This document shows positions 3,632-55,200 of a stretch of DNA of 64,000 nucleotides, piece by piece. The DNA is taken from the IMG/VR virus record IMGVR_UViG_3300042391_000634, positions 186,001-250,000 of that record; one strand, 5' to 3'. The number at the start of each line of letters is the position of its first letter. The stretch's first letter is position 1. The translations under genes were made by a program, and so were the position numbers. The notes under the pieces were generated by a model. That model made no database searches. It saw nothing but the letters and a program-made list of their open reading frames with translations, and was not told the DNA's origin.

Positions 3632-5034
3632 TGGAAATTTTAAAGAATAGTAATAATTTAAAAATAGTGATTAATACTGAAGAAAACTTCAGAACTGACT
3701 TAGGTTGGCAAGATAATCTTGCTCAGTTTGAGGATGAGGTTTTAAAAGATATTATTAATCCATCTAAGAATTATGAAACAGTTAGATACATACATAAACC
3801 ATATACCGGAACCACTTTATTAAAAGAACAAACAGATATATGGTTTCAATTTTATTTTGTTGATGGTAGTGATTATGTTTTAGATTACAATCCCGTCGGA
3901 ATTACCACACAGGAAAATGAATTAATGTTAAAACAAGCAACCGAAAGTTTTTTCAGATTAGAATTATTTAAAACACCAAGTGTAGTTTCACAAACAGGAA
4001 CTACATTAACATGTGAACCCCCAACAAGACAAAATAGAAGATTGGTTAATTCTAAAAATTTATCATTACCATTAGGTGAAAAGTTTTTTTATGTAACAGA
4101 AAATTCTGGTTATTTTATTCATATACCAGTTTTTAACGGGTCAAATTATAGAAACAAAGAAAACATGTATTTGTTTTGGTTTGATGACGAAAGTGCATTA
4201 ACCGATACAAATTTAAGTGGGACAACAACATTAGACCAATATATATTTGGAACGGGGTCCACAATACAAACTATTTTATTTACAAATGAAAATAATAATA
4301 TAACACAAGTAAATATACCAACAGGTGGAACAACATTAATTGGATGGACAGGACAAACATTTACAATTCCAAATATAGTAACTTATAATAGAAATTATTA
4401 TCATGGAATAAATACGTTTTTTATGACGGCAAAATTCTTTGATGCAAAAAATGGACAATTAATAGATTTTACAAATTCAGGATTTACAACAGGACATACA
4501 ATTACTGAGGAAAATGATATGTATTATCAAATTGATTTTGATAATTACGAAAGAACATATCAAATTTACAAATATACAGGAACAAAGGGAGTTAGAATTG
4601 GTAATGGGGTTTCTTCACCAATAAAGTTTTTTGAAAAAGGAGGAGCATCAATACCACCTACACCTACACCAACTCCTACACCTACAATAACACCAACACC
4701 AACGGTTACACCAACACCTGGCGCTCCAACATCAACACCAACTCCTACACCTACACCAACAAATACATTTCAAAATTATAATGGTATTGGAATTTATCCA
4801 TCTTCAGATAATTTAACTTGTTCAAACCATACAGAACAATTAAATGTTTTAATTTATTTAAATGATAGTGATTTTGATATTTATGAATCTACGGGTTATT
4901 TGACTAGTGGAATGGTAATATATGATAATAGTTCAGGAGATCCTTGGTATGTTTCAAATAAAGTATATGATTCAACAATCACTACCATCTTTAGTGTGAC
5001 AAGTGGTGTGTTAAGTGTTAATACATTATGTTAA
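3631..5034 (+). CDS. Structural protein with PT linker and C-terminal Cys-bounded module
   Basis: GTG start overlaps the previous stop. A PTPTPT tract is followed by a C...GMVIYD...C module. Confidence 0.55.
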   Translation: MEILKNSNNLKIVINTEENFRTDLGWQDNLAQFEDEVLKDIINPSKNYETVRYIHKPYTGTTLLKEQTDIWFQFYFVDGSDYVLDYNPVGITTQENELMLKQATESFFRLELFKTPSVVSQTGTTLTCEPPTRQNRRLVNSKNLSLPLGEKFFYVTENSGYFIHIPVFNGSNYRNKENMYLFWFDDESALTDTNLSGTTTLDQYIFGTGSTIQTILFTNENNNITQVNIPTGGTTLIGWTGQTFTIPNIVTYNRNYYHGINTFFMTAKFFDAKNGQLIDFTNSGFTTGHTITEENDMYYQIDFDNYERTYQIYKYTGTKGVRIGNGVSSPIKFFEKGGASIPPTPTPTPTPTITPTPTVTPTPGAPTSTPTPTPTPTNTFQNYNGIGIYPSSDNLTCSNHTEQLNVLIYLNDSDFDIYESTGYLTSGMVIYDNSSGDPWYVSNKVYDSTITTIFSVTSGVLSVNTLC

Positions 5035-10100: not shown

Positions 10101-12865
10101 AAATTTTCATTGATAATAATGGAGAAGAAAAAATTAAATTAACATCATTTAAATATGGACCTAATGATTGTACAAAAAATATATATGTTGATTTAACCGC
10201 ACGTGCATTTACTGACACTTATGATTGTTCATTAGGACAAGGGTCGGCTGAATGGAAGTTATCAACTCCAACTCCAACCCCAACTCCGGCACCAACCTCA
10301 ACACCAACGGTAACACCAACACCAGTACCAACCTCGACTCCAGTACCAACCTCAACACCAACGGTAACACCAACAAGTACTCCGGCACCAACCGGAACAC
10401 CAACACCAACACCTACTATTACACCAACACCAACGGTAACACCAACACCAACACCAATTCCATGTAATTTTACAATTGAATATACTGCATTAATATCAAC
10501 CCCGACCCCTACACCAACTGTTACACCAACACCAACTGTTACACCAACACCAATTCCATGTAATTTTACAATTGAATATACTGCATTAATATCAACCCCG
10601 ACTCCGACCCCTACTATTACACCAACACCAACGGTAACACCAACCCCAATTCCATGTAGTTTTACAATTGAATATACCGCATTAATTTCAACACCAACCC
10701 CAACACCTACTATTACACCAACACCAACGGTAACACCAACCCCAATTCCATGTATCTTTACAATTGAATATACTGTATTAACACCAACACCAACCCCTAC
10801 ACCAACTGTTACACCAACACCTACACCTAGCATATGTCAAAGACCAACGGGGTTACCTTGGGATATTATTAATTACGCATATAAAATAAATTCGGGAGAT
10901 TCATACACTAACTTCACGTCATCATTACAAGCGGCTTGTGACGCATTAACAGCAATTAGATTGGCGGAACAAACTCAACTTGTTAATTCGGTACTCGGAA
11001 TAACTTTCAATGCTGATCCAGCGGTACAACTTGGAGCAACATTATATAATAATAATTCAATAACAACTTGTGATAAAGTACAATCGGGTTATTATATATA
11101 CGATTTAAGTGGTTTTCAAACGTACATTTTAGGTGTTGGAAGTGATGGATTGGTTACATATTTTGGTGATTGTACGTTAACAACAAATACCCCAACCCCA
11201 ACACCTACGGTTACACCAACACCAGAACCAACTAGTACTCCAACAGTTACACCAATTCCATGTAATTTTACTATTGAGTATACCGTATTAATATCAACCC
11301 CAACCCCAACACCTACTTCAACAAGTACACCAGCACCAACTGAAACACCAACCCCTACACCAACTGTTACCCCAACATCAACACCTACATGTGTGGTAAC
11401 AACATATAATTCATTATTTAGTGGAACTACTTCAGAAAATGCTTGTAATAATATAACACAATATGTGCCGGATGCGTGGGTGTGTATTTTGAATGATAGT
11501 TATTTACAAATTGGTGAAGCTTGGTATACGAATATTAATCTTACAACACCATATCCTGATGGATATTATTGTTTCCATAATGAAACACTTGGGTTTAATA
11601 ATACGTGGGTTTATATTGTAAACGGTTTAATTGATTCTACCGGATTATGTCTGACACCAACAAATACACCGACCCCAACACCTACGGTTACATCAACACC
11701 TGCACCTACTGGCACTCCAACACCAACACCAATTCCATGTAATTTTACAATTGAATATACTGCATTAATATCAACCCCAACCCCAACTCCAACACCATTA
11801 CCAACTAGTACACCAACAGTAACGCCAGATCCAACTAGTACTCCAACAGTAACACCTAACCCAACTAGTACCCCAACAGTAACACCTAACCCAACTAGTA
11901 CCCCAACAGTAACACCTAATCCTACTAGTACACCATTACCAACTAGTACCCCAACGATTACACCAGAACCAACTAGTACACCATTACCAACTAGTACACC
12001 AACGGTTACACCAATTCCGTGTAACTTCACCATTGAATACACTGCATTAATATCAACTCCAACACCAAATCCAACTAGTACACCAACAGTAACACCAAAT
12101 CCAACTAGTACACCAACAGTAACACCAAATCCAACTAGTACACCAACAGTAACGCCAGATCCAACTAGTACACCAAATCCAACTAGTACACCAACAGTAA
12201 CGCCAGATCCAACTAGTACACCAAATCCAACTAGTACACCAACAGTAACGCCAGATCCAACTAGTACACCAAATCCAACTAGTACACCAACACCAACACC
12301 ATTACCAACATCCACACCAACTGTTACACCAACACCTTGCCCATCAGAAGGTACTTTTTTAATGTCTACTTGTGTTGGTTATGATTTATATTACAGATTC
12401 GCGAATGGTAGTTGTGGTACGTATGACACATTTATTGAAAGTAATTCCTCAAGTTGTGGTTATGTTGCACCAACACCCACCCCAACCCCAACCCCATTAC
12501 CGGACGGAGTTTTAAGTTTTGGATCCACAGATGGTGGGTTCATACAGTGTGGAGCGGGTTACGATTCTAATGACTATGAATATTATAGAACATATGAGGT
12601 TATTTTTACGAGCGCACGAAATACGATGGGATATGTTGTTGTCTATTTAAGCGATAATTCAAGTATACAAATACCATTTAATGAAAATGATACCTCCGCA
12701 TCTACAACCATTTTCTGTGGATGTGGATCATCATGTGCGGACATACAATATGTAATGAATATAATATACACCACACCAACCCCAACACCAACAGCGGAAC
12801 CAACATTTACACCAACTCCGACACCAGAAGGAGGTGGAGGACAGGACCCCCTTGAACCTATATAA
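7178..12865 (+). CDS. Baseplate wedge-like protein (P2 gpI/T4 gp7-like region) with long PT-repeat C-terminal extension
   Basis: [14 protein letters not shown]...[28 protein letters not shown] resembles the Tail_P2_I-type motif. The C-terminal ~870 aa consist of PT linkers, 7 PIPCxFTIEYT peptides and Cys modules. Confidence 0.6.
10262..12340 (+). repeat. Pro-Thr coding repeats with 7 interspersed PIPC(N/S/I)FTIEYT(A/V)L units
   Basis: ACACCA-type codon repeats and near-identical ~45-nt units (ccaattccatgtaattttacaattgaatatactgcattaatatca). Confidence 0.9.
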
Positions 12866-12914: not shown

Positions 12915-13652
12915 ATGCCAGTTTTTTTACCATCTAAAACAATAAATTTAAAATTAGGAGCGGGAAGTTCCTCATTTCCAGACAATTTCCAAATTGACAT
13001 ATGGTCTTGGAATGTTACAACTGATGCTGCCGAATTTAATAGAACATATGCAACAGGAATTACTAAAACACAATTAGCAACCGCAGGTGTGGGTTATAAT
13101 GTTACAGGTATTACAGGTAACGATTATAAAGTTGTTGCAACTAGTACAGGAACATGTACAACATTAGACGATGTTGAGGTTTATGTGGATGCATTATCAA
13201 TATACCAACCATCATTTAGTGGAACGTTTACAGATATATATAATGGTTATCCTACGACACCACAAGTTAATACTTTTACACAAACAGGTACAGGTAGTGG
13301 AGAAGATTCGTTTGCTGTAACGGGACCTTATGGTGGTCTACAAAATATTACAGGTAATCACGTTGTTGGTATTTTTGATACTTTATCATATATAGACGCA
13401 ACAGATTTTACATTATCTTATGTAAGTGGAACATCGGGAGGAGTCACAGTTTATGATGATTATGCTAACGGACCATTTAGTAGTTTTTCTATCACTAAAT
13501 CGGGTAAATCATTCACATTAATAGGTAGTTCTAACACATCATTAGCTCCACAAAATTTTGTACCTTTTATTAAAGGAACTATGAGATTAACATATGACCC
13601 ATCAACTTATTATGTTGATTTTGATTATTGGTATAACCCAACTAACATTTAA
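12915..13652 (+). CDS. Putative virion accessory protein
   Basis: N-terminal ~90 aa (TGITKTQL...VVATSTGTC) resemble the N-termini of 13713 and 14966. Confidence 0.5.
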   Translation: MPVFLPSKTINLKLGAGSSSFPDNFQIDIWSWNVTTDAAEFNRTYATGITKTQLATAGVGYNVTGITGNDYKVVATSTGTCTTLDDVEVYVDALSIYQPSFSGTFTDIYNGYPTTPQVNTFTQTGTGSGEDSFAVTGPYGGLQNITGNHVVGIFDTLSYIDATDFTLSYVSGTSGGVTVYDDYANGPFSSFSITKSGKSFTLIGSSNTSLAPQNFVPFIKGTMRLTYDPSTYYVDFDYWYNPTNI

Positions 13653-13700
13653 TAAAACACTTTATTATAAGGGGTTTTTTGTTTAATTTCTATATAATAC

Positions 13701-13708
13701 TATTTATA
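13701..13708 (+). promoter_or_regulatory. TATTTATA putative late promoter
   Basis: 4 nt before ATG 13713. Confidence 0.5.
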
Positions 13709-13712
13709 GAAT

Positions 13713-14366
13713 ATGTCCGAATATTTTAATGCTGAAGTTAATATAGGTAAAAAGAGTAACTCAATTGAAAAAGTTAGTTTATACGCATGTTCTGGATCAA
13801 CGGAAGCAACATGTGACCCAACACCAATATCTGGTTATAATGGTATTCTATGGACAGATACAAAATTTTCACCACTTTTTGAGAGTGGTTCATATCCATC
13901 ATTATCAGGATTGGTAACATTTATAACTGGATTAACGTTATACACACATATATATATTAGAGTATTAACAACATCAAGTTATAATGGAAGTTGTATACGT
14001 AGTAATATGATACCAATTATTGGTATCCCAACTCCAACAGCAACACCATTACCAACCTCTACACCAACACCAATACCATGTAGTTTTGACGGAACCATTG
14101 TTTATGGATTACCTGTTACCCCAACTCCTACACCAACACCATTACCAACCTCAACACCAAACCCAACTAGTACACCAACCTCAACACCAAACCCAACTAG
14201 TACACCAACCTCAACACCAAACCCAACACCAACTAGTACACCAACTGTTACACCAACAGCAACAACATTAAGTGGGCCTTATTTTAACTCAATAGGATTA
14301 GCTTATAGCCCAAGTAATCCAAATAAATGTCAAGCATATACTTGTTATAATAATTTAACAACATAA
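13713..14366 (+). CDS. Virion accessory protein with PT linker
   Basis: Shared N-terminal domain, a [12 protein letters not shown] peptide, a PT tract, and a short Cys-containing C-terminal segment. Confidence 0.55.
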
Positions 14367-14384
14367 TTTAAAAAAAAATAATAT

Positions 14385-14705
14385 ATGAGTATACTATGTG
14401 AGTTAGTCACTTTTTATCATAATTTATCGGCAGGATCAAACGGAAATTCACTATTGAATGAAACTTTGTATGGTGACACATCAGGTGGTACAATAATGGA
14501 TGGATATTATTCCGATGGAACATATATCTACACCGTATCGGGAAGTCTTGTTACATATGTTGAAACTGCAGCTTCATTAGGATGTCAAGGTACAACACCA
14601 GAACCAACCGTAACACCAACACCACAAGGATATTCACAACAATTGGGTTATGGAACATCCTCAAATAACGCATGTATTTTCTACACCGGACCAATTGAAG
14701 GGTAA
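14385..14705 (+). CDS. Small Cys-module protein (apparent domain fragment)
   Basis: LYGD...GYYSDG...V...C, then a PT linker and LGYGTSSNNAC. Confidence 0.5.
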   Translation: MSILCELVTFYHNLSAGSNGNSLLNETLYGDTSGGTIMDGYYSDGTYIYTVSGSLVTYVETAASLGCQGTTPEPTVTPTPQGYSQQLGYGTSSNNACIFYTGPIEG

Positions 14706-14726
14706 CCACTTTAAAAATAAAAAACA

Positions 14727-14951
14727 ATGTCAGCAGGAACTTTACAATTTTATTCTAATTACGAAACATTACCAACGGCATTATTCGACGATGATATGAA
14801 CCCATTATCACCAACGCCAATTATGTATACAAATATTAACATGACTAGTACAGCAAATAATGGTTATTATTCAAATGGTGTCAATTGGTGGAGAGTAACA
14901 GGTGGTGCAGGAGTAATAACAGATACCGGTGTTTGTCCGGCGGTTGATTAA
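14727..14951 (+). CDS. Small Cys-module protein (apparent domain fragment)
   Basis: MYTN...NGYYSNG...VTGGAGVITDTGVC; A-rich start region. Confidence 0.5.
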   Translation: MSAGTLQFYSNYETLPTALFDDDMNPLSPTPIMYTNINMTSTANNGYYSNGVNWWRVTGGAGVITDTGVCPAVD

Positions 14952-14965
14952 AATAAAAAAAGAAA

Positions 14966-15934
14966 ATGTCAATACCAGTAACAATAACATTAAACACAAT
15001 AGTAGGAACACCAGGTCCTTTTAGTTTATATTCATGTATTGAATCGACTTGTTCGGGTTCATTAACACCATTTGTAACAGGAGTGTCGTTATCTGATTTA
15101 CAAACTGGTAGTTTAGTTCCTGATATTAGCGGAAATACACCTACTTACGTTAAAATTAAATCTACAGGAGGAAGTTGCGCGTATGAAATTATTAAACCAA
15201 TAACAGGAATACCTACGGTAACTCCAACTCCAACACCAACCATAACACCAACACCTGGTTCAACTAGTACCCCAACTCCAACTCCAACTCCAACAGCAAC
15301 AACGGGAACATGTGTACCTAAAGAATATAACATAACAGCTAACGGTAATTTCTATTGGATTGATTGTGAAGGAAATGACAGATATAGTTATTTTACAACT
15401 GCAGATAGTCCAATATGTATTTGTAGTTCAAGTAATTTACCAATATCGTTAGATGGTGGAACAGGAACATTAGCGGGCGGTGGATGTGAATGTAATCCAG
15501 TAACACCAACTCCAACACCGACAGTTACACCAACACCAACCCCAACACCAAACTATTATAATGTAAAAGTTAAATTAGTAGGTATGATGGGTACCAGTGG
15601 GAATTTAACGGTACGTCAATCATCAGATGGTATAACATTTATAAATTCAGTAACAATAACTACCACAGATAACGATGTTGCTCAACAGTCCTTTAACGGT
15701 ACACCAGGTTATTATTATTACTTTATAGTTGCAAGAACTTCAGGTAATTCTGATAGATTGAATTGGTATACCCAAGTATTCCCATCCGACTTCAATCCTG
15801 GATCGATAGCTGATGCCGGTTGCACTTCACTTGGAGGAGCAACATTACAATCAGAGACTTTCCAATTACCAAATCCGACACAAAGTGTATCTGAAGTGTT
15901 ATTTTATGGAGATATAAGTGACGCATGTCTATAA
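14966..15934 (+). CDS. Virion accessory protein with PT linkers and Cys-rich modules
   Basis: N-terminal GPFSLYSC...TGVSLSDL...KIKSTGGSC domain, two PT tracts and a WIDCEG module. Confidence 0.55.
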   Translation: MSIPVTITLNTIVGTPGPFSLYSCIESTCSGSLTPFVTGVSLSDLQTGSLVPDISGNTPTYVKIKSTGGSCAYEIIKPITGIPTVTPTPTPTITPTPGSTSTPTPTPTPTATTGTCVPKEYNITANGNFYWIDCEGNDRYSYFTTADSPICICSSSNLPISLDGGTGTLAGGGCECNPVTPTPTPTVTPTPTPTPNYYNVKVKLVGMMGTSGNLTVRQSSDGITFINSVTITTTDNDVAQQSFNGTPGYYYYFIVARTSGNSDRLNWYTQVFPSDFNPGSIADAGCTSLGGATLQSETFQLPNPTQSVSEVLFYGDISDACL

Positions 15935-29248: not shown

Positions 29249-29542
29249 ATGAAAAAGTTAATCGAATTAATAAAAACATATAAACTACAGATACTGATTT
29301 TTTTAACAGTTGTATTCTTTTTTCGCTCTTGTAGTAGTTCAAGTAAAGTGACTAAATTAGAAAAAATTGAAAAACAAAACGTATCTATGATTGATAGTCT
29401 TAAAACTAAACATAAAAACGAAAAAATAGCAATTCATAGTTTTTATGATAATTGGATTACACAAAAAGATAGAGGACCACAATTAATGGAACTACATTTT
29501 ATTGTTAAAGAAAACTTAAAAAAAGAACAAGAATCTAAATGA
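29249..29542 (+). CDS. Small membrane-anchored coiled-coil protein (lysis cassette?)
   Basis: N-terminal TM ending FRSC; TATTTATA at 29228-29235. Confidence 0.45.
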   Translation: MKKLIELIKTYKLQILIFLTVVFFFRSCSSSSKVTKLEKIEKQNVSMIDSLKTKHKNEKIAIHSFYDNWITQKDRGPQLMELHFIVKENLKKEQESK

Positions 29543-30687
29543 AACATTGGTTAAACCAAAATTTTAAAGCATTAATCATTGCAGCATTTTTGATTCCAAT
29601 CATTACTGTTGCTATTGTTTCTATTTCACACGTAACAAAATGGTATGGTATATCCAATCCCGTAAGTTGGGCCGTTTATCTATCAATTGGAATTGAGATT
29701 GCAGCATTATCGGCATTGGCTGCCATTTCAGCAAACATGGGTAAGAAAGTTTATTTCCCATTTGCCGTCGTAACGTTAATACAGTTTATAGGTAATATAT
29801 TTTTCGCGTACACATATATCGATATCAACGGACAGTCTTTTAGGGATTGGGTTGATTTAGTGGCACCATTAACAGAATTAATGGGTGTAGACCCAACTGA
29901 CTTAGTGGGTAATAAAAGATTCTTAGCATTTTTTGCCGGTGGTATGTTACCAATCATTTCATTATCCTTTCTTCATATGTTAGTTAAATTTACAGAAGAA
30001 GATAGACTAAAAGAAAATCAAGCACCACCAATTAAAGAATTAGAATCTAATCCCGAAGATTTAAAACATTTTGTTGATGAAGCAACAAGATTACATTTAA
30101 GTGAAGATGATTTAAAGAAACTTGAAGAAGTTTTGTTAAACCCACCTCCACCAAATGAAGAATTAAAGAAAGCAGCGGATGAATATAAAAGAAGAGGAGA
30201 ATTATTGGCGGAGATAATTAAGAACGACGAAGAATTAGGTTTATATGATGAACCGTTTGATAATTCAATGATTAAAGAAGATTTGGATGATGAAGTATCT
30301 GATTGGGATGAAACATTAATGGATGGTTTAGAAGATGAAGAACCTTTCTTCACTGAAGAAGAGATAGAGAATATTTTACAAGAAGAACCAACAGAGGAAG
30401 AGATTCAACGAAATTTTTCTACTATAGAACCTGAAACGGAGAATATTTTACAAAATAACGAATCACTTGAATTTGATATTTTAGTTCAAGAGGATTTAGA
30501 AGTTCCTGAACAAGAATTTGATGGATTTGTTCCTGAACCATTTGCAACACCTGAGGAAGTTATAGAATTGAAAATAGATGAGGATAATGAACGAATGGAT
30601 ATTATAGGTCAGAATGGAAATGAAGGTCTCCATTATGAAAACGAAGAGAATACATCATCCGAACAAGATGATGAAAAAAAAAATTAG
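29539..30687 (+). CDS. Multi-pass membrane protein with very acidic C-terminal tail (holin-like position)
   Basis: About four TM segments in the first 150 aa, then an E/D-rich tail; lies upstream of an amidase-like gene. Confidence 0.55.
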   Translation: MKHWLNQNFKALIIAAFLIPIITVAIVSISHVTKWYGISNPVSWAVYLSIGIEIAALSALAAISANMGKKVYFPFAVVTLIQFIGNIFFAYTYIDINGQSFRDWVDLVAPLTELMGVDPTDLVGNKRFLAFFAGGMLPIISLSFLHMLVKFTEEDRLKENQAPPIKELESNPEDLKHFVDEATRLHLSEDDLKKLEEVLLNPPPPNEELKKAADEYKRRGELLAEIIKNDEELGLYDEPFDNSMIKEDLDDEVSDWDETLMDGLEDEEPFFTEEEIENILQEEPTEEEIQRNFSTIEPETENILQNNESLEFDILVQEDLEVPEQEFDGFVPEPFATPEEVIELKIDEDNERMDIIGQNGNEGLHYENEENTSSEQDDEKKN

Positions 30688-52247: not shown

Positions 52248-55200
52248 ATGGCAACAACAGTTCAGATATTAACAACAAATTATAGTGGTCAAACTGCTAC
52301 AATTACATTTTCACCATGTAGTGGAGGAACGATCAATTTAGGTTCACATGTTATTCCTTACAACTATATAAGTGATAATTATCAAGGTGATTATTCGTTA
52401 TATTTTGCCGATTTTAGTCAAACTTGTACATTTAATATTCCATGTGCAACACCAACACCAACACCAACGGTAATTGTTGCAACTGCCACACCAACACCAA
52501 CAGTAACACCAGATCCTACAGCAACACCGACTAGTACACCAGATCCTACAGCAACACCGACTAGTACACCAGATCCTACAGCAACACCGACTAGTACACC
52601 AGATCCTACCGCAACACCGACTAGTACACCAGATCCTACCGCAACACCAACAGTAACACCGGAACCAACAGCAACACCGACTAGTACACCAACAGTAACA
52701 CCGGAACCTACCGCAACACCGACTAGTACACCAACAGTAACACCGGAACCTACCGCAACACCGACTAGTACACCGGAACCAACTTATTACTATTATTATT
52801 TATTGAATTGTGATTTAGTTAATAATGCTTACGGTAGAAGTTTAAATCCATATATACATTTGTCTGGTTTTACATTTAATGTTGATACTAATTTGTGTTA
52901 TACAATTAATGGTCAGGAAACCGATCCATATTATGATTATGATTTAGATAATGCAACTATAGTAACTGATTGTACGGATATTTTATGTCCTACACCAACA
53001 CCAACTCCGACACCAACTGAAACACCAACACCGACACCAATACCTTCATATAGTTACGGAGTACATACAGGTGGGACATATTTAGATCCATATACGGCGT
53101 GTCAAAGTCAAACAGTTGATTCTATATTTTACAGTATAAATCCAACATTAAATGTTGGTGATGTATTATATGCAGATGTGGAATTATCAAGTATATATGT
53201 TACTGAAATTGGAAATTACTTTATAATTGAAGATGAAGAAAATAAATATGTAATAGATACAGACAGCTTAGGATCGATAATTAGCTTAACAAATTGTAAT
53301 ACTATTCAACCAACTCCAACACCAACAGGTGCACCTACAGATACACCAACTCCAACTCCAACACCAACAGGTGCACCAACAGATACACCTACTCCAACAC
53401 CTACCGCAACACCAACAGTAACACCAGATCCAACGGCAACACCTACCGCAACACCAACAGTAACACCAATACCAAGTGCAGCGTTTAATGGTATTGCAAT
53501 TACAGGTAATACTTCCATGTATTGTGCATGTCTAGTAGTTGGAACAGATAGTATTTATTACATAAATTCATCAAGTATTAATGATAATGGAATTTATTTA
53601 TATTCAGATTCAGGATTTACACAAACATTACCAAATGGAGTATTATATAAATTAATATCTACAGATGGTTTTAATACTGAATATATTGTTTCGGTAGATG
53701 AAACAGGTATGATTTCATCTGTTACAAATTGTTTAACAGGTGTAATTCCACCAACAGCATTTAACGGTATTCAATTGAGTGATACAACACCACTTTATGA
53801 TGTTTGTCAATCAGGAACTGGAAATGTATATTACATATTTGGTGGAGAAACAATTGAAATAGGAACGTATCTTTATACAGATGAATGTACAACTTCAAAT
53901 AATTTAGCACCAAATGGTTATTTACATAAATTAGAATCATTAGACAACTTATATACTCAATATATTGTAACGGTAGATGAAACAGGTATGATTACATCTG
54001 TCACAAATTGTGATACCATATTTGAACCAACCCCAACCCCAACAGTAACACCGGAACCAACAGCAACACCGACTAGTACACCAACAGTAACACCGGAACC
54101 TACCGCAACACCGACTAGTACACCAACAGTAACACCAGATCCAACAGCAACACCGACTAGTACACCAACAGTAACACCAGATCCTACAGCAACTCCAACA
54201 CCAACACCAGATCCAACTGCAACTCCAACACCAACACCTGACCCTAATTTCTATTATGAGGCGGATAGATATGAATGTCAGTTAGATGGTTCTTGTAGTT
54301 TTATTGAAACTATTGTTATTGCAAATCAACCTGAATTAGTATTAAATGCAAGATTTAGATTAGACCCAACAACAGGATATATATTTCAGGTAGTTAGTTC
54401 AACAACACCACAAATTGCTACATTAACAAATATGACGGGATTAGGGGTAACAAGTTGTAGTACTTTATGTTCGCAACCACCGACACCAACACCTACTCCA
54501 GAACCAACTAGTACCCCAACTGCAACACCTGATCCAACAGCAACACCGACACCAACACCAAATCCAACAGCAACGCCTGATCCAACAGCAACACCGACAC
54601 CAACACCTAATCCTACCGCAACACCAACGTCAACACCAAATCCAACTGCAACACCAACACCGACACCAAATCCAACAGCAACACCAACACAAACTCCTGA
54701 CCCTAATTACTATTTCTTAGCAGAGGAATATGAATGTTTAGGAAATGGTAATTGCCAATATGTAAGTGATTTATATATAAGTAACCCTGTAGATTTAACT
54801 ATCGCACCAACACAACGATATAGATTAGATCCAACATCAGGATTAATTTTAAGAGTAATGACAGCGGTAGCACCACAAGTTGCGTTAATTACAAATATGA
54901 GTGGTAGCGGTCAAATAAATTGTAATGCATTTTGTGCTCAACCACCAACAGCAACCCCTACACCAAATCCTACTGCAACACCTGATCCAACAGCAACACC
55001 GACAGTAACACCAAATCCAACTGCAACACCGACACCAACACCAAATCCTACTGCAACACCTGATCCAACAGCAACACCGACAGTAACACCAAATCCAACT
55101 GCAACACCGACACCAACACCAAATCCTACTGCAACACCTGATCCAACAGCAACACCGACAGTAACACCAAATCCAACTGCAACACCGACACCAACACCAA

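What the first reader, a model, noticed from the sequence alone, without database searches (positions are those of the whole stretch)
14270..14951. Same Cys-bounded module split at the same point across three consecutive in-frame genes
Seen: intact modules in 7178, 52248 and 3631 read [strand..AC]...GxxLYxD/N...GYY...V..G.I...C. In 13713-14951 the first part ends one gene ([17 protein letters not shown]...stop; LGYGTSSNNACIFY...stop). The remainder begins the next gene (..LYGD..GYYSDG..V..C; ..MYTN..GYYSNG..VTGGAGVI..C). All three ORFs share one frame, separated by 18- and 21-nt A-rich spacers containing extra TAA codons, which resemble genuine start regions rather than point nonsense mutations. 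Inference: programmed gene fission yields a daisy chain in which each protein donates its C-terminal Cys strand to the next. Ribosomal bypass or decay are alternatives.
Basis: partly seen in the sequence, partly recalled or inferred. Interest (0 to 1): 0.62.

Follow-up and report, generated by a model that had tools for sequence, protein, structure and literature searches.

The report
Split docking module links phage proteins
In a 335-kb lake-water phage, a small cysteine-bounded protein module is cut between neighbouring genes at the same loop twice in a row, and related phages keep these cuts under selection. The three proteins are therefore probably meant to snap together into a short chain rather than being broken genes.

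Summary
ORFs 13713-14366 (A), 14385-14705 (B) and 14727-14951 (C) share one frame, with 18- and 21-nt A-rich spacers. A and B each end in a short strand-plus-Cys tail ("tag"). B and C each start with the rest of a module that is intact six times elsewhere in the window.

It is not decay. At least nine related metagenomic lineages keep the same chain. B is 101-111 aa, C is 71-74 aa, and dN/dS is 0.3-0.5 with confidence limits below 1.

It is not bypass or readthrough. In relatives the spacers are 3-53 nt and the frames differ. The window's shared frame is therefore incidental.

In a search of 1.84 billion representative proteins, all 11 real matches to B start at or near their own N-terminus, so the A|B cut is old and fixed. 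Four relatives are natural B-C fusions with an intact second module. This proves that tag2 plus C is one domain and that B|C is a true fission or fusion site.

Recombination swaps tag plus next-gene receptor as one unit, across the gene boundary. Predicted docking of tag2 onto C has only weak support (0.50 against 0.05 for controls). The module has no Pfam family or solved fold. Physical binding and disulfide linkage are inferred, not shown.

The parts
13713..14366 (+). Gene A (217 aa). It has an all-beta N-terminal anchor domain (aa 1-104), PT linkers with a short '[13 protein letters not shown]' island, and a C-terminal tag1.
   Evidence: ORF. The N-domain belongs to a family of 17 aligned members and is modelled as all-beta, with pLDDT 74. 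Only weak Ig-like matches were found, E about 0.1. The same N-domain heads a 580-aa unsplit protein in L040.
14265..14363 (+). tag1, the last 33 aa of A. It consists of a strand, a Cys, then Y-x-Cys and a short tail. It is the presumed N-part of split module 1.
   Evidence: It is conserved at the C-terminus of upstream proteins that carry at least five different N-terminal architectures in 10 loci. Two Cys are invariant. Homology to module N-parts is not statistically demonstrable.
14367..14384 (+). Spacer 1 (18 nt, A-rich, one in-frame TAA), which is the start region of B.
   Evidence: Its last 15 nt, immediately upstream of the ATG, are 80% A, more than at 99.6% of internal ATGs of the genome. 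Relatives have 3-23 nt here and other frames.
14385..14585 (+). B residues 1-67, the C-part ('receptor') of split module 1. It begins Met-x-x-x-Cys and ends at the closing Cys.
   Evidence: Profile match E 1.4e-3. Of 12 hits at E<=1e-3 among 1.84 billion representatives, one is a PT-linker match; the other 11 place this part at residue 1-19 of the protein. Cys4/5 is conserved.
14586..14624 (+). PT linker of B (aa 68-80).
   Evidence: Sequence. The recombination breakpoint between L087 and L088 lies at its 3' end.
14625..14702 (+). tag2, B residues 81-106. It consists of a strand, 'NNAC' and a tail, and is the N-part of split module 2.
   Evidence: It is continuous with the C-equivalent in the natural fusions P0015, P0020, P0021 and P0022. 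It resembles the N-part of the intact L018 module. B tails are the top 5 of 1802 ORF tails scored with an N-part profile, E 0.036-0.26.
14706..14726 (+). Spacer 2 (21 nt). Bases 14706-14714 (CCA CTT TAA) are the remnant of the longer tail and the ancestral stop. The conserved 12-nt A-rich leader follows.
   Evidence: Comparison with L081, L082, L087 and L090. A close relative in run X24 reads GGT GAC at 14700-14705.
14727..14951 (+). Gene C (74 aa). It is the C-part of split module 2 only, so it acts as a cap with no tag of its own.
   Evidence: Stand-alone homologues of 70-74 aa at 73-93% identity. Omega is 0.28-0.47. It matches the intact L018 module at E 1.6e-6.
4774..5031 (+). Intact module at the C-terminus of the 3631 protein.
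10874..11647 (+). Two intact modules in the 7178 protein (10874-11173 and 11396-11647).
53052..54011 (+). Three intact modules in the 52248 protein.

Best explanation
A, B and C are three real, separately translated genes of a freshwater jumbo phage that probably infects Bacteroidetes. Two copies of a small Cys-bounded module of about 85 aa are each divided between neighbouring genes, in the loop that follows the module's invariant Cys.

The upstream protein keeps a tag of about 25-33 aa at its C-terminus, made of a strand plus a Cys-containing turn or helix. The downstream protein starts with the remaining 65-70 aa.

The most likely mechanism is fragment complementation. Tag1 of A would complete the truncated module at the head of B, and tag2 of B would complete C. 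This would give a finite chain, anchor-B-C, hanging by PT linkers from an all-beta anchor domain on the virion. After release, Cys-Cys bonds across the interface may lock the chain.

Shown: the split, its conservation, independent translation, purifying selection, the identity of tag2 plus C with one domain, and the inheritance of tag plus receptor as a unit.

Inferred: binding, disulfides, virion location, and that the benefit is plug-and-play exchange of anchors and distal modules.
For: 1. The same gene chain (A, then B of 101-111 aa, then C of 71-74 aa, then the 647-701 aa neighbour) occurs in independent metagenomes at 65-94% B identity.

2. Omega is 0.28-0.47 with bootstrap limits below 1. 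ORFs and start and stop positions are kept while dS reaches about 1.

3. Frames and spacers vary. Spacers are 3-53 nt, L081 lost one A of the spacer run, and L088 carries a (TAA)13 run. C is conserved all the same, so it is translated from its own ATG. The 15 nt before both ATGs are 80% A, which is typical of or stronger than real starts in this genome. TAA is the main stop, 195 of 250.

4. The representative search gave 12 hits at E<=1e-3. One (P0023, 1575 aa) is a linker-only match. The other 11 begin within the first 19 residues of the protein, so no A-B fusion was found.

5. P0015, P0020, P0021 and P0022 are natural B-C fusions, collinear with B and then C. Their upstream genes still end in tag1.

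6. Mosaic structure. L087 and L088 are 90-100% identical in DNA from tag1 through B's linker, then drop to 24-60% from the first codon of tag2 through C. Their A N-domains are unrelated. The unit of exchange is therefore tag plus the next gene's receptor.

7. An extra Cys is conserved on both sides of the A|B break, the second Cys of tag1 and Cys4/5 of B.

8. Predicted complex of B(69-106) with C: ipSAE 0.50, best of 3 controls 0.05, verdict 'weak support'. The mark was reached by 58 of 80 solved complexes and 2 of 110 mismatched pairs, but a score of 0.60 or under by only 7 of the 80 and by both mismatches that passed. The runs agree in at least 88% of their contacts and the partner's pLDDT is at least 75. 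My own alignments were used, so these counts hold only roughly.

9. Independent lake runs X4, X5 and X6 carry contigs identical over both junctions.
Against: - No experiment or confident model shows binding. The docking score is in the range the tool calls more often wrong than right without a strong prior.
- Tag1 cannot be shown statistically to be a module N-part, and no intact relative of module 1 was found.
- The module model is only moderate, with pLDDT 72, and no coordinates were available to check Cys-Cys distances.
- The C-parts might fold and work alone.
- Virion location is a guess from gene neighbourhood and domain type.
- On the module-2 tree the L088-type split C groups with the fused forms (support 90/91, not decisive). 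The number and direction of fission or fusion events is therefore unresolved.
Confidence: 0.7

Rival explanations
1. Independent small proteins. The gene fission is real and conserved, but the truncated modules of B and C fold and act on their own. The tails on A and B would then be vestigial or serve another purpose, such as an assembly or chaperone signal, with no chain.
For: The family profile matches the C-parts without the tags. Adding the tags does not raise the score. The N-part is the least conserved part of the family. Docking support is only weak.
Against: The tags are conserved, with invariant Cys and Tyr/Ile positions. Tag and following receptor are exchanged together by recombination. 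Paired extra Cys flank the A|B break. In intact modules the invariant Cys lies in the part that would be missing.
Confidence: 0.2
2. One protein is made after all, by stop-codon readthrough, ribosomal bypass of the spacers (as in T4 gene 60), or recoding of TAA.
For: In the window all three ORFs share a frame and the spacers are short.
Against: Relatives have the genes in different frames, for example L081 B|C, L082 A|B, L087 A|B and all of L088. Their spacers are 3-53 nt with several stops. The spacers hold two or three in-frame TAA each. TAA ends 195 of 250 long ORFs of the genome. No tRNA was found in the window.
Confidence: 0.03
3. Decay. A once single gene of about 410 aa was broken by nonsense mutations and the pieces are pseudogene remnants.
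For: A close relative (L040) has a single 580-aa gene with the same N-domain. The window's B carries a premature stop three codons before the ancestral one.
Against: The split is kept in at least 9 lineages with intact ORFs, conserved start and end points and omega 0.3-0.5. The L040 protein has other modules, not these. The early stop removes only the variable tail, which L082 lacks as well.
Confidence: 0.04
4. An assembly or sequencing artefact created the stops and spacers.
For: None, beyond the low-complexity PT-coding repeats nearby, which do break assemblies (many partial contigs at 14110-14290).
Against: Contigs from three independent runs are identical across both junctions. The same architecture appears in ENA, JGI and Logan assemblies from other samples.
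Confidence: 0.01

Closest known systems
Donor-strand complementation or exchange in chaperone-usher pili and in type V (Bacteroidetes) pili
   Same: An incomplete small domain is completed by a short segment donated by the neighbouring subunit, which gives a head-to-tail chain. This comparison rests on general knowledge, not on a test here.
   Different: In this phage the donor is a C-terminal tail of 25-33 aa holding the domain's invariant Cys, not a single N-terminal strand. The chain is finite (A, B, C, where C has no tag) and is made of different proteins. No chaperone or usher is evident. The fold is not Ig-like and has no solved relative. The two halves clearly arose by fission of one gene.
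Naturally split inteins and 'fractured genes' in metagenomes (Dassa et al. 2009, PMC2677866; abstract seen)
   Same: A domain is divided between two genes and is thought to reassemble from the two products.
   Different: No Hint or intein family hit was found for A, B or C at E<=0.1. The fragments are far too small. No splicing is implied, and the genes are adjacent.
Cohesin-dockerin assembly of cellulosomes on PT-linker scaffolds
   Same: Small docking units separated by Pro/Thr-rich linkers allow plug-and-play combination of modules. In this phage, different anchor proteins carry the same tag1.
   Different: Cohesin and dockerin are two complete, unrelated folds. In this phage the two partners are halves of one fold. 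There is no sequence or fold similarity.
SpyTag/SpyCatcher (engineered split CnaB2 domain)
   Same: A short tag plus a truncated domain reconstitute one fold and become covalently locked.
   Different: SpyTag/SpyCatcher is engineered and uses an isopeptide bond. This case is natural, any covalent lock would be a disulfide, and that lock is only inferred.
T4 gene 60 translational bypass and split topoisomerase genes
   Same: Adjacent in-frame coding pieces of a phage are separated by a short untranslated gap.
   Different: The frame and gap length are not conserved here, and each piece has its own start.

Membership tests
Unnamed Cys-bounded 'GYY' module of these jumbo phages (profile built here from 58 copies) | Core block: hYY strand, G-x-x-LY-x-D, G-Y-Y, then y-v and G-x-i, closed by a C-terminal Cys. 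| tested here: met
   B(1-67) matches at E 1.4e-3 and C at E 6.6e-4 against the profile, Z=910. C matches the intact L018 module at E 1.6e-6.
Unnamed Cys-bounded 'GYY' module of these jumbo phages (profile built here from 58 copies) | N-part: a strand followed by the one invariant Cys of the family, in the same polypeptide. | tested here: not met
   B and C lack it. It lies at the end of the preceding protein. That absence is the finding.
Gene fission/fusion ('Rosetta stone') pair | Two adjacent proteins are collinear and contiguous with a single protein in relatives. | tested here: met
   For B|C: window B residues 1-97 align to P0020 residues 1-98, and window C residues 7-70 align to P0020 residues 109-176. 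The same holds for P0015, P0021 and P0022. For A|B no fused relative was found in 1.84 billion representatives.
Donor-strand / fragment complementation systems | The donated segment physically completes the partner's fold. | tested here: inconclusive
   Complex prediction of B(69-106) with C gave 0.50 against a best control of 0.05, 'weak support'. The mark was reached by 58 of 80 solved complexes and 2 of 110 mismatched pairs, but a score of 0.60 or under by only 7 of the 80 and by both mismatches that passed. No contacts were reported.
Programmed translational bypass or readthrough | Conserved frame relation and conserved gap between the coding pieces. | tested here: not met
   Frames differ in L081, L082, L087, L088, L090, L093 and L094. 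Gaps are 3-53 nt.
Split intein | Hint-domain blocks in the two fragments. | tested here: not met
   No Pfam family at E<=0.1 for A, B or C.
bS21-encoding freshwater jumbo phages of Bacteroidetes (Chen et al. 2022, PMC9723584) | A genome of about 300 kb or more with a bS21 gene on the reverse strand. | tested here: met
   The record is 335,630 bp. PF01165 scores 44.3 bits at G000:C1:122185-122331 on the minus strand. The abstract was read. No phylogeny was made, so clade membership itself was not tested.

The most novel reading that the evidence does not exclude
These phages have evolved a natural, orthogonal pair of tag/catcher connectors by splitting one small domain in the same loop twice. 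Tag1 docks only into B and tag2 only into C, and each joint is then locked by intermolecular disulfides: the family's invariant Cys to the closing Cys, plus an extra Cys pair that staples the A|B break. Because recombination at PT linkers moves tag plus catcher as a unit, any anchor protein can be fitted with the same distal adhesin chain. That would make this a plug-and-play system for virion surface fibres, and a ready-made small protein-ligation pair.
Probability: 0.4. Interest if true: 0.75.

Novelty: new variant of a known kind. Interest (0 to 1): 0.64.

Why it matters
Gene fission inside a small domain, rather than between domains, is rare. It is usually read as pseudogenisation.

Here the cut is fixed, selected, repeated at the same loop in two tandem modules, and inherited across the gene boundary. 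This argues that the halves must find each other.

If the docking is real, it has three consequences:
- It is a new way for phages to assemble and reshuffle surface fibres.
- Annotators should not mark such short ORFs as fragments.
- It is a possible source of small orthogonal tag/catcher pairs. The tags are 25-33 aa and the receptors 67-74 aa.

It also gives a first handle on an uncharacterised module family that is abundant in the PT-linker proteins of freshwater jumbo phages.

Tried and rejected
**Profile searches**
- An HMM built from the six window modules found neither split piece at E<=10. After iteration over the 80 loci it found C only (E 1e-3). A segment-based iteration was needed to reach both pieces.
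- A scan of the 80 IMG/VR loci and of the whole 335-kb genome for other N-terminally truncated modules found none beyond this locus. Sensitivity is low, since B itself is missed at E<=0.1.
- phmmer with the X-masked read-through gave nothing useful.
- hhalign of tag1 against the module family gave E 0.12 over 6 columns.
- Joining tag to receptor and scoring against 1694 control tails gave no gain for tag1 and p of about 0.04 for tag2.

**Family and database look-ups**
- Pfam and PHROGs returned no real family for A, B or C. The only PHROGs match was a weak one on A's PT-linker region (phrog_15511, E 0.0069, no stretch passing on its own).
- The GenBank phage collection had no DNA or protein match for the locus or for the 692-aa neighbour. 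It had only distant hits for the SbcC-like protein.
- The protein-atlas feature search returned only viral hypothetical clusters scoring below 0.9.
- A literature search for a described equivalent found none.

**Fold of the module**
- Foldseek against the PDB gave a best E of 0.9, to BamE.
- VIA-align wide gave a best Z of 3.1.
- The ESM Atlas returned only phage hypothetical proteins, TM 0.64-0.68.

**Ideas left open**
- The B|C junction may have been copied from the A|B junction, because both tails have P-I-E-like endings and both are cut after 'PI' in L082. This is only suggestive and was not tested statistically.
- The tree of module 2 is too poorly resolved to count fission events.

**Steps not taken**
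- I did not read the stops through under another genetic code for a single-chain fold, because the genome shows no such code.

Full report
**Context**

The window is bases 186001-250000 of a single 335,630-bp virus record, which CheckV rates 100% complete. GC is about 30% and almost all genes lie on the + strand. PHROGs and Pfam identify a primase, an exonuclease, an SbcC-like protein and DNA methyltransferases.

The genome carries a ribosomal protein bS21 gene on the reverse strand. This matches the freshwater jumbo phages predicted to infect Bacteroidetes that Chen et al. 2022 described (PMC9723584). Runs holding this DNA are lake-water metagenomes.

The finding lies in a block of genes for very long Pro/Thr-linker proteins. 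It sits between a conserved 1895-aa protein (7178) and a conserved 692-aa protein (15963).

**The observation**

ORFs A (13713-14366, 217 aa), B (14385-14705, 106 aa) and C (14727-14951, 74 aa) are all in frame 0. The spacers are 18 and 21 nt, A-rich, and hold one and two further in-frame TAA.

Six intact modules of 85-100 aa occur in the 3631, 7178 and 52248 proteins. Each has a strand, an invariant Cys, an aromatic 'hYY' strand, G-x-x-LY-x-D, GYY, a further strand, G-x-i and a closing Cys.

A ends with the strand-plus-Cys part. B starts with the rest, then has a short PT linker, and ends with another strand-plus-Cys part. C is only the rest.

A profile built from 58 copies of the module in 80 related IMG/VR loci matches the head of B at E 1.4e-3 and C at E 6.6e-4. 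C also matches an intact internal module of L018 at E 1.6e-6. In L018 the preceding residues resemble tag2: 'SLGYNVSTGIDAC' in L018 against 'QLGYGTSSNNAC' in tag2.

Both breaks fall in the same loop, 9-12 residues after the invariant Cys.

The short tags themselves are beyond the reach of profile statistics.

**Not decay, not an artefact**

The word-index search found stand-alone B homologues of 101-111 aa at 65-94% identity and C homologues of 70-74 aa at 73-93% identity.

Their contigs come from ENA, JGI and Logan assemblies of other samples. They show the same order: an upstream protein ending in tag1, then B, then C, then the homologue of the 692-aa protein.

Pairwise dN/dS is 0.28-0.66 for B and 0.26-0.55 for C over dS 0.1-1.2. 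Bootstrap 95% limits lie below 1 in seven of eight pair tests. Starts and ends stay in place.

Three independent lake runs carry contigs identical to the window across both junctions. An RNA-library run holds short contigs of a near relative on B and across the B|C junction. That does not prove transcription.

**Not bypass or readthrough**

In relatives the A|B spacer is 3-23 nt and the B|C spacer 11-53 nt. The frames differ in L081, L082, L087, L088, L090, L093 and L094.

L081 differs from L090 by one A in the spacer run, which shifts the frame. C is nearly identical between them all the same (dN 0.024). L088 has a (TAA)13 run as its spacer.

The 15 nt before the B and C start codons are 80% A. 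That is richer than at 99.6% of internal ATGs and than at most real starts of this genome. TAA is the usual stop, at 195 of 250 long ORFs. The shared frame in the window is therefore a coincidence or a relic.

One of the 'extra' TAA codons (14712-14714) is the ancestral stop. Relatives end 'GPIEGGPL', the window ends 'GPIEG', and L082 ends 'GPI'. The extreme tail is evidently free to vary.

**Age and direction**

A profile of B was scored against 1.84 billion representative proteins and gave 12 hits at E<=1e-3. One of them (P0023, 1575 aa) is a match to the PT linker only. In the other 11 the match starts at residue 1-19 of the protein. No A-B fusion exists among the detectable relatives, so the A|B cut is old and fixed.

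Four representatives (P0015, P0020, P0021, P0022; 169-176 aa) are B-C fusions in which module 2 is intact. BLASTP shows that B and C are collinear and contiguous with them. Their upstream genes still end in tag1. This is the direct proof that tag2 plus C is one domain.

Other relatives (P0008, P0016, P0019) carry a different complete module after B's linker, and no C gene follows.

On a small tree of module 2, the L088-type split C groups with the fused forms (support 90/91). The number and direction of fission or fusion events is therefore open.

**Genetic coupling across the gene boundary**

Tag1 sits on upstream proteins with at least five different N-terminal architectures, from 136 to 520 aa.

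L087 and L088 have unrelated A N-domains. Even so, their DNA is 90-100% identical from the linker before tag1, through the spacer, to the end of B's linker. Identity then falls to 24-60% exactly at the first codon of tag2 and stays low through C.

Recombination at PT linkers thus moves [tag1 + spacer + B receptor] and [tag2 + spacer + C] as units. This is what one expects if tag and receptor must match.

An extra Cys is conserved on both sides of the A|B break, the second Cys of tag1 and Cys4/5 of B. Ordinary intact modules lack it. This suggests a disulfide staple, which is an inference.

**Structure**

An AlphaFold2 model of the intact L018 module, with a 34-row alignment, is moderate: pLDDT 72 and pTM 0.62. 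It has a helix starting at the invariant Cys and a three-stranded meander at the C-terminal end. The breaks would fall just after that helix.

No solved structure resembles it. The ESM Atlas returns only phage hypothetical proteins.

The N-domain of A is all-beta with only weak Ig-like matches.

The predicted complex of B(69-106) with C scored ipSAE 0.50 against 0.05 for the best of three controls. The tool's verdict is weak support. The mark was reached by 58 of 80 solved complexes and 2 of 110 mismatched pairs. A score of 0.60 or under was reached by only 7 of those 80, and by both mismatches that passed. The runs agree in at least 88% of their contacts and the partner's pLDDT is at least 75. 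My own alignments were used, so the counts hold only roughly.

**Mechanism proposed**

A, B and C are translated separately. Translation may be coupled, given the 3-23 nt gaps.

Tag1 would complete B's first module and tag2 would complete C. C has no tag and so ends the chain. The chain would hang from A's beta-sandwich anchor by PT linkers, and disulfides may lock it outside the cell.

The likely gain is modularity, since anchors and distal modules can be re-paired by recombination without refolding problems. Binding, disulfides and virion location are all inferred.

**Comparison with known systems**

It works like donor-strand complementation in pili, or like an engineered tag/catcher pair. 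The linker-and-dock logic recalls cohesin-dockerin.

It is not a member of any of these families. There is no sequence or fold relation, no intein signature, and the criteria for bypass are not met. No description of this arrangement was found in the literature searches.

**Verdict**

This is a real, conserved, twice-repeated intra-domain gene fission, with good genetic evidence and weak structural evidence that the halves re-associate. It is a new variant of a known principle, built on a module family with no known fold. Interest 0.64.

Noticed in passing
G000:C1:122185-122331 (- strand; outside the window): The genome has a ribosomal protein bS21 gene (PF01165, 44.3 bits) on the reverse strand. 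This is as described for freshwater jumbo phages predicted to infect Bacteroidetes (PMC9723584).
   Followed up: partly
window 14700-14714: The window's B ends three codons earlier than its relatives, reading GGG TAA CCA CTT TAA against GGT GGT CCA CTT TAA. A near relative in the RNA-library run X24 reads GGT GAC at the same place. The codon differs at all three positions, so this is not a simple point nonsense mutation.
   Followed up: partly
L088:1874-1926: The B|C spacer of this relative is a microsatellite of about 13 TAA repeats, 53 nt long. The C gene behind it is nevertheless intact.
   Followed up: no
window 14079-14117; window 10463-12049 (seven copies): Short hydrophobic islands sit inside the PT linkers. 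'[13 protein letters not shown]' occurs in A and in several relatives. 'C-x-FTIEYT-x-L' occurs seven times in the 7178 protein. They look like mini-modules or strand-forming spacers of unknown role.
   Followed up: no
window 15890-15931: The 322-aa protein 14966 ends '...SEVLFYGDISDACL', a strand plus 'AC' plus one residue. This resembles a tag and ranks 13 of 1802 ORF tails with the N-part profile, at E 1.9. The next gene (15963) does not start with a module C-part, so any partner is unknown.
   Followed up: partly
window 12915-15934 and L001-L080 (about 9970 back to about 6000): The stretch between the conserved 1895-aa and 692-aa genes is a hypervariable cassette. It holds two to five genes, each with an N-domain of one all-beta family followed by different sets of small Cys-bounded modules. 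Close relatives differ completely here. For example, L040 has one 580-aa gene carrying A's N-domain.
   Followed up: partly
L087:945-1318 vs L088:1445-1830: There are sharp recombination breakpoints at PT-linker borders. DNA identity is 90-100% between them and 24-60% beyond them. PT-coding repeats seem to act as recombination joints.
   Followed up: partly
window 29539-30687: A 382-aa protein has a TacA1-like antitoxin domain hit (PF08681, E 1.8e-6) at residues 176-217.
   Followed up: no
window 14110-14290: In all three DNA runs many unrelated contigs pile up on the PT-coding repeat of A, with depth up to about 117 against 3-5 beside it. The repeat is shared by many genes or phages in these lakes and breaks the short-read assemblies there.
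   Followed up: no
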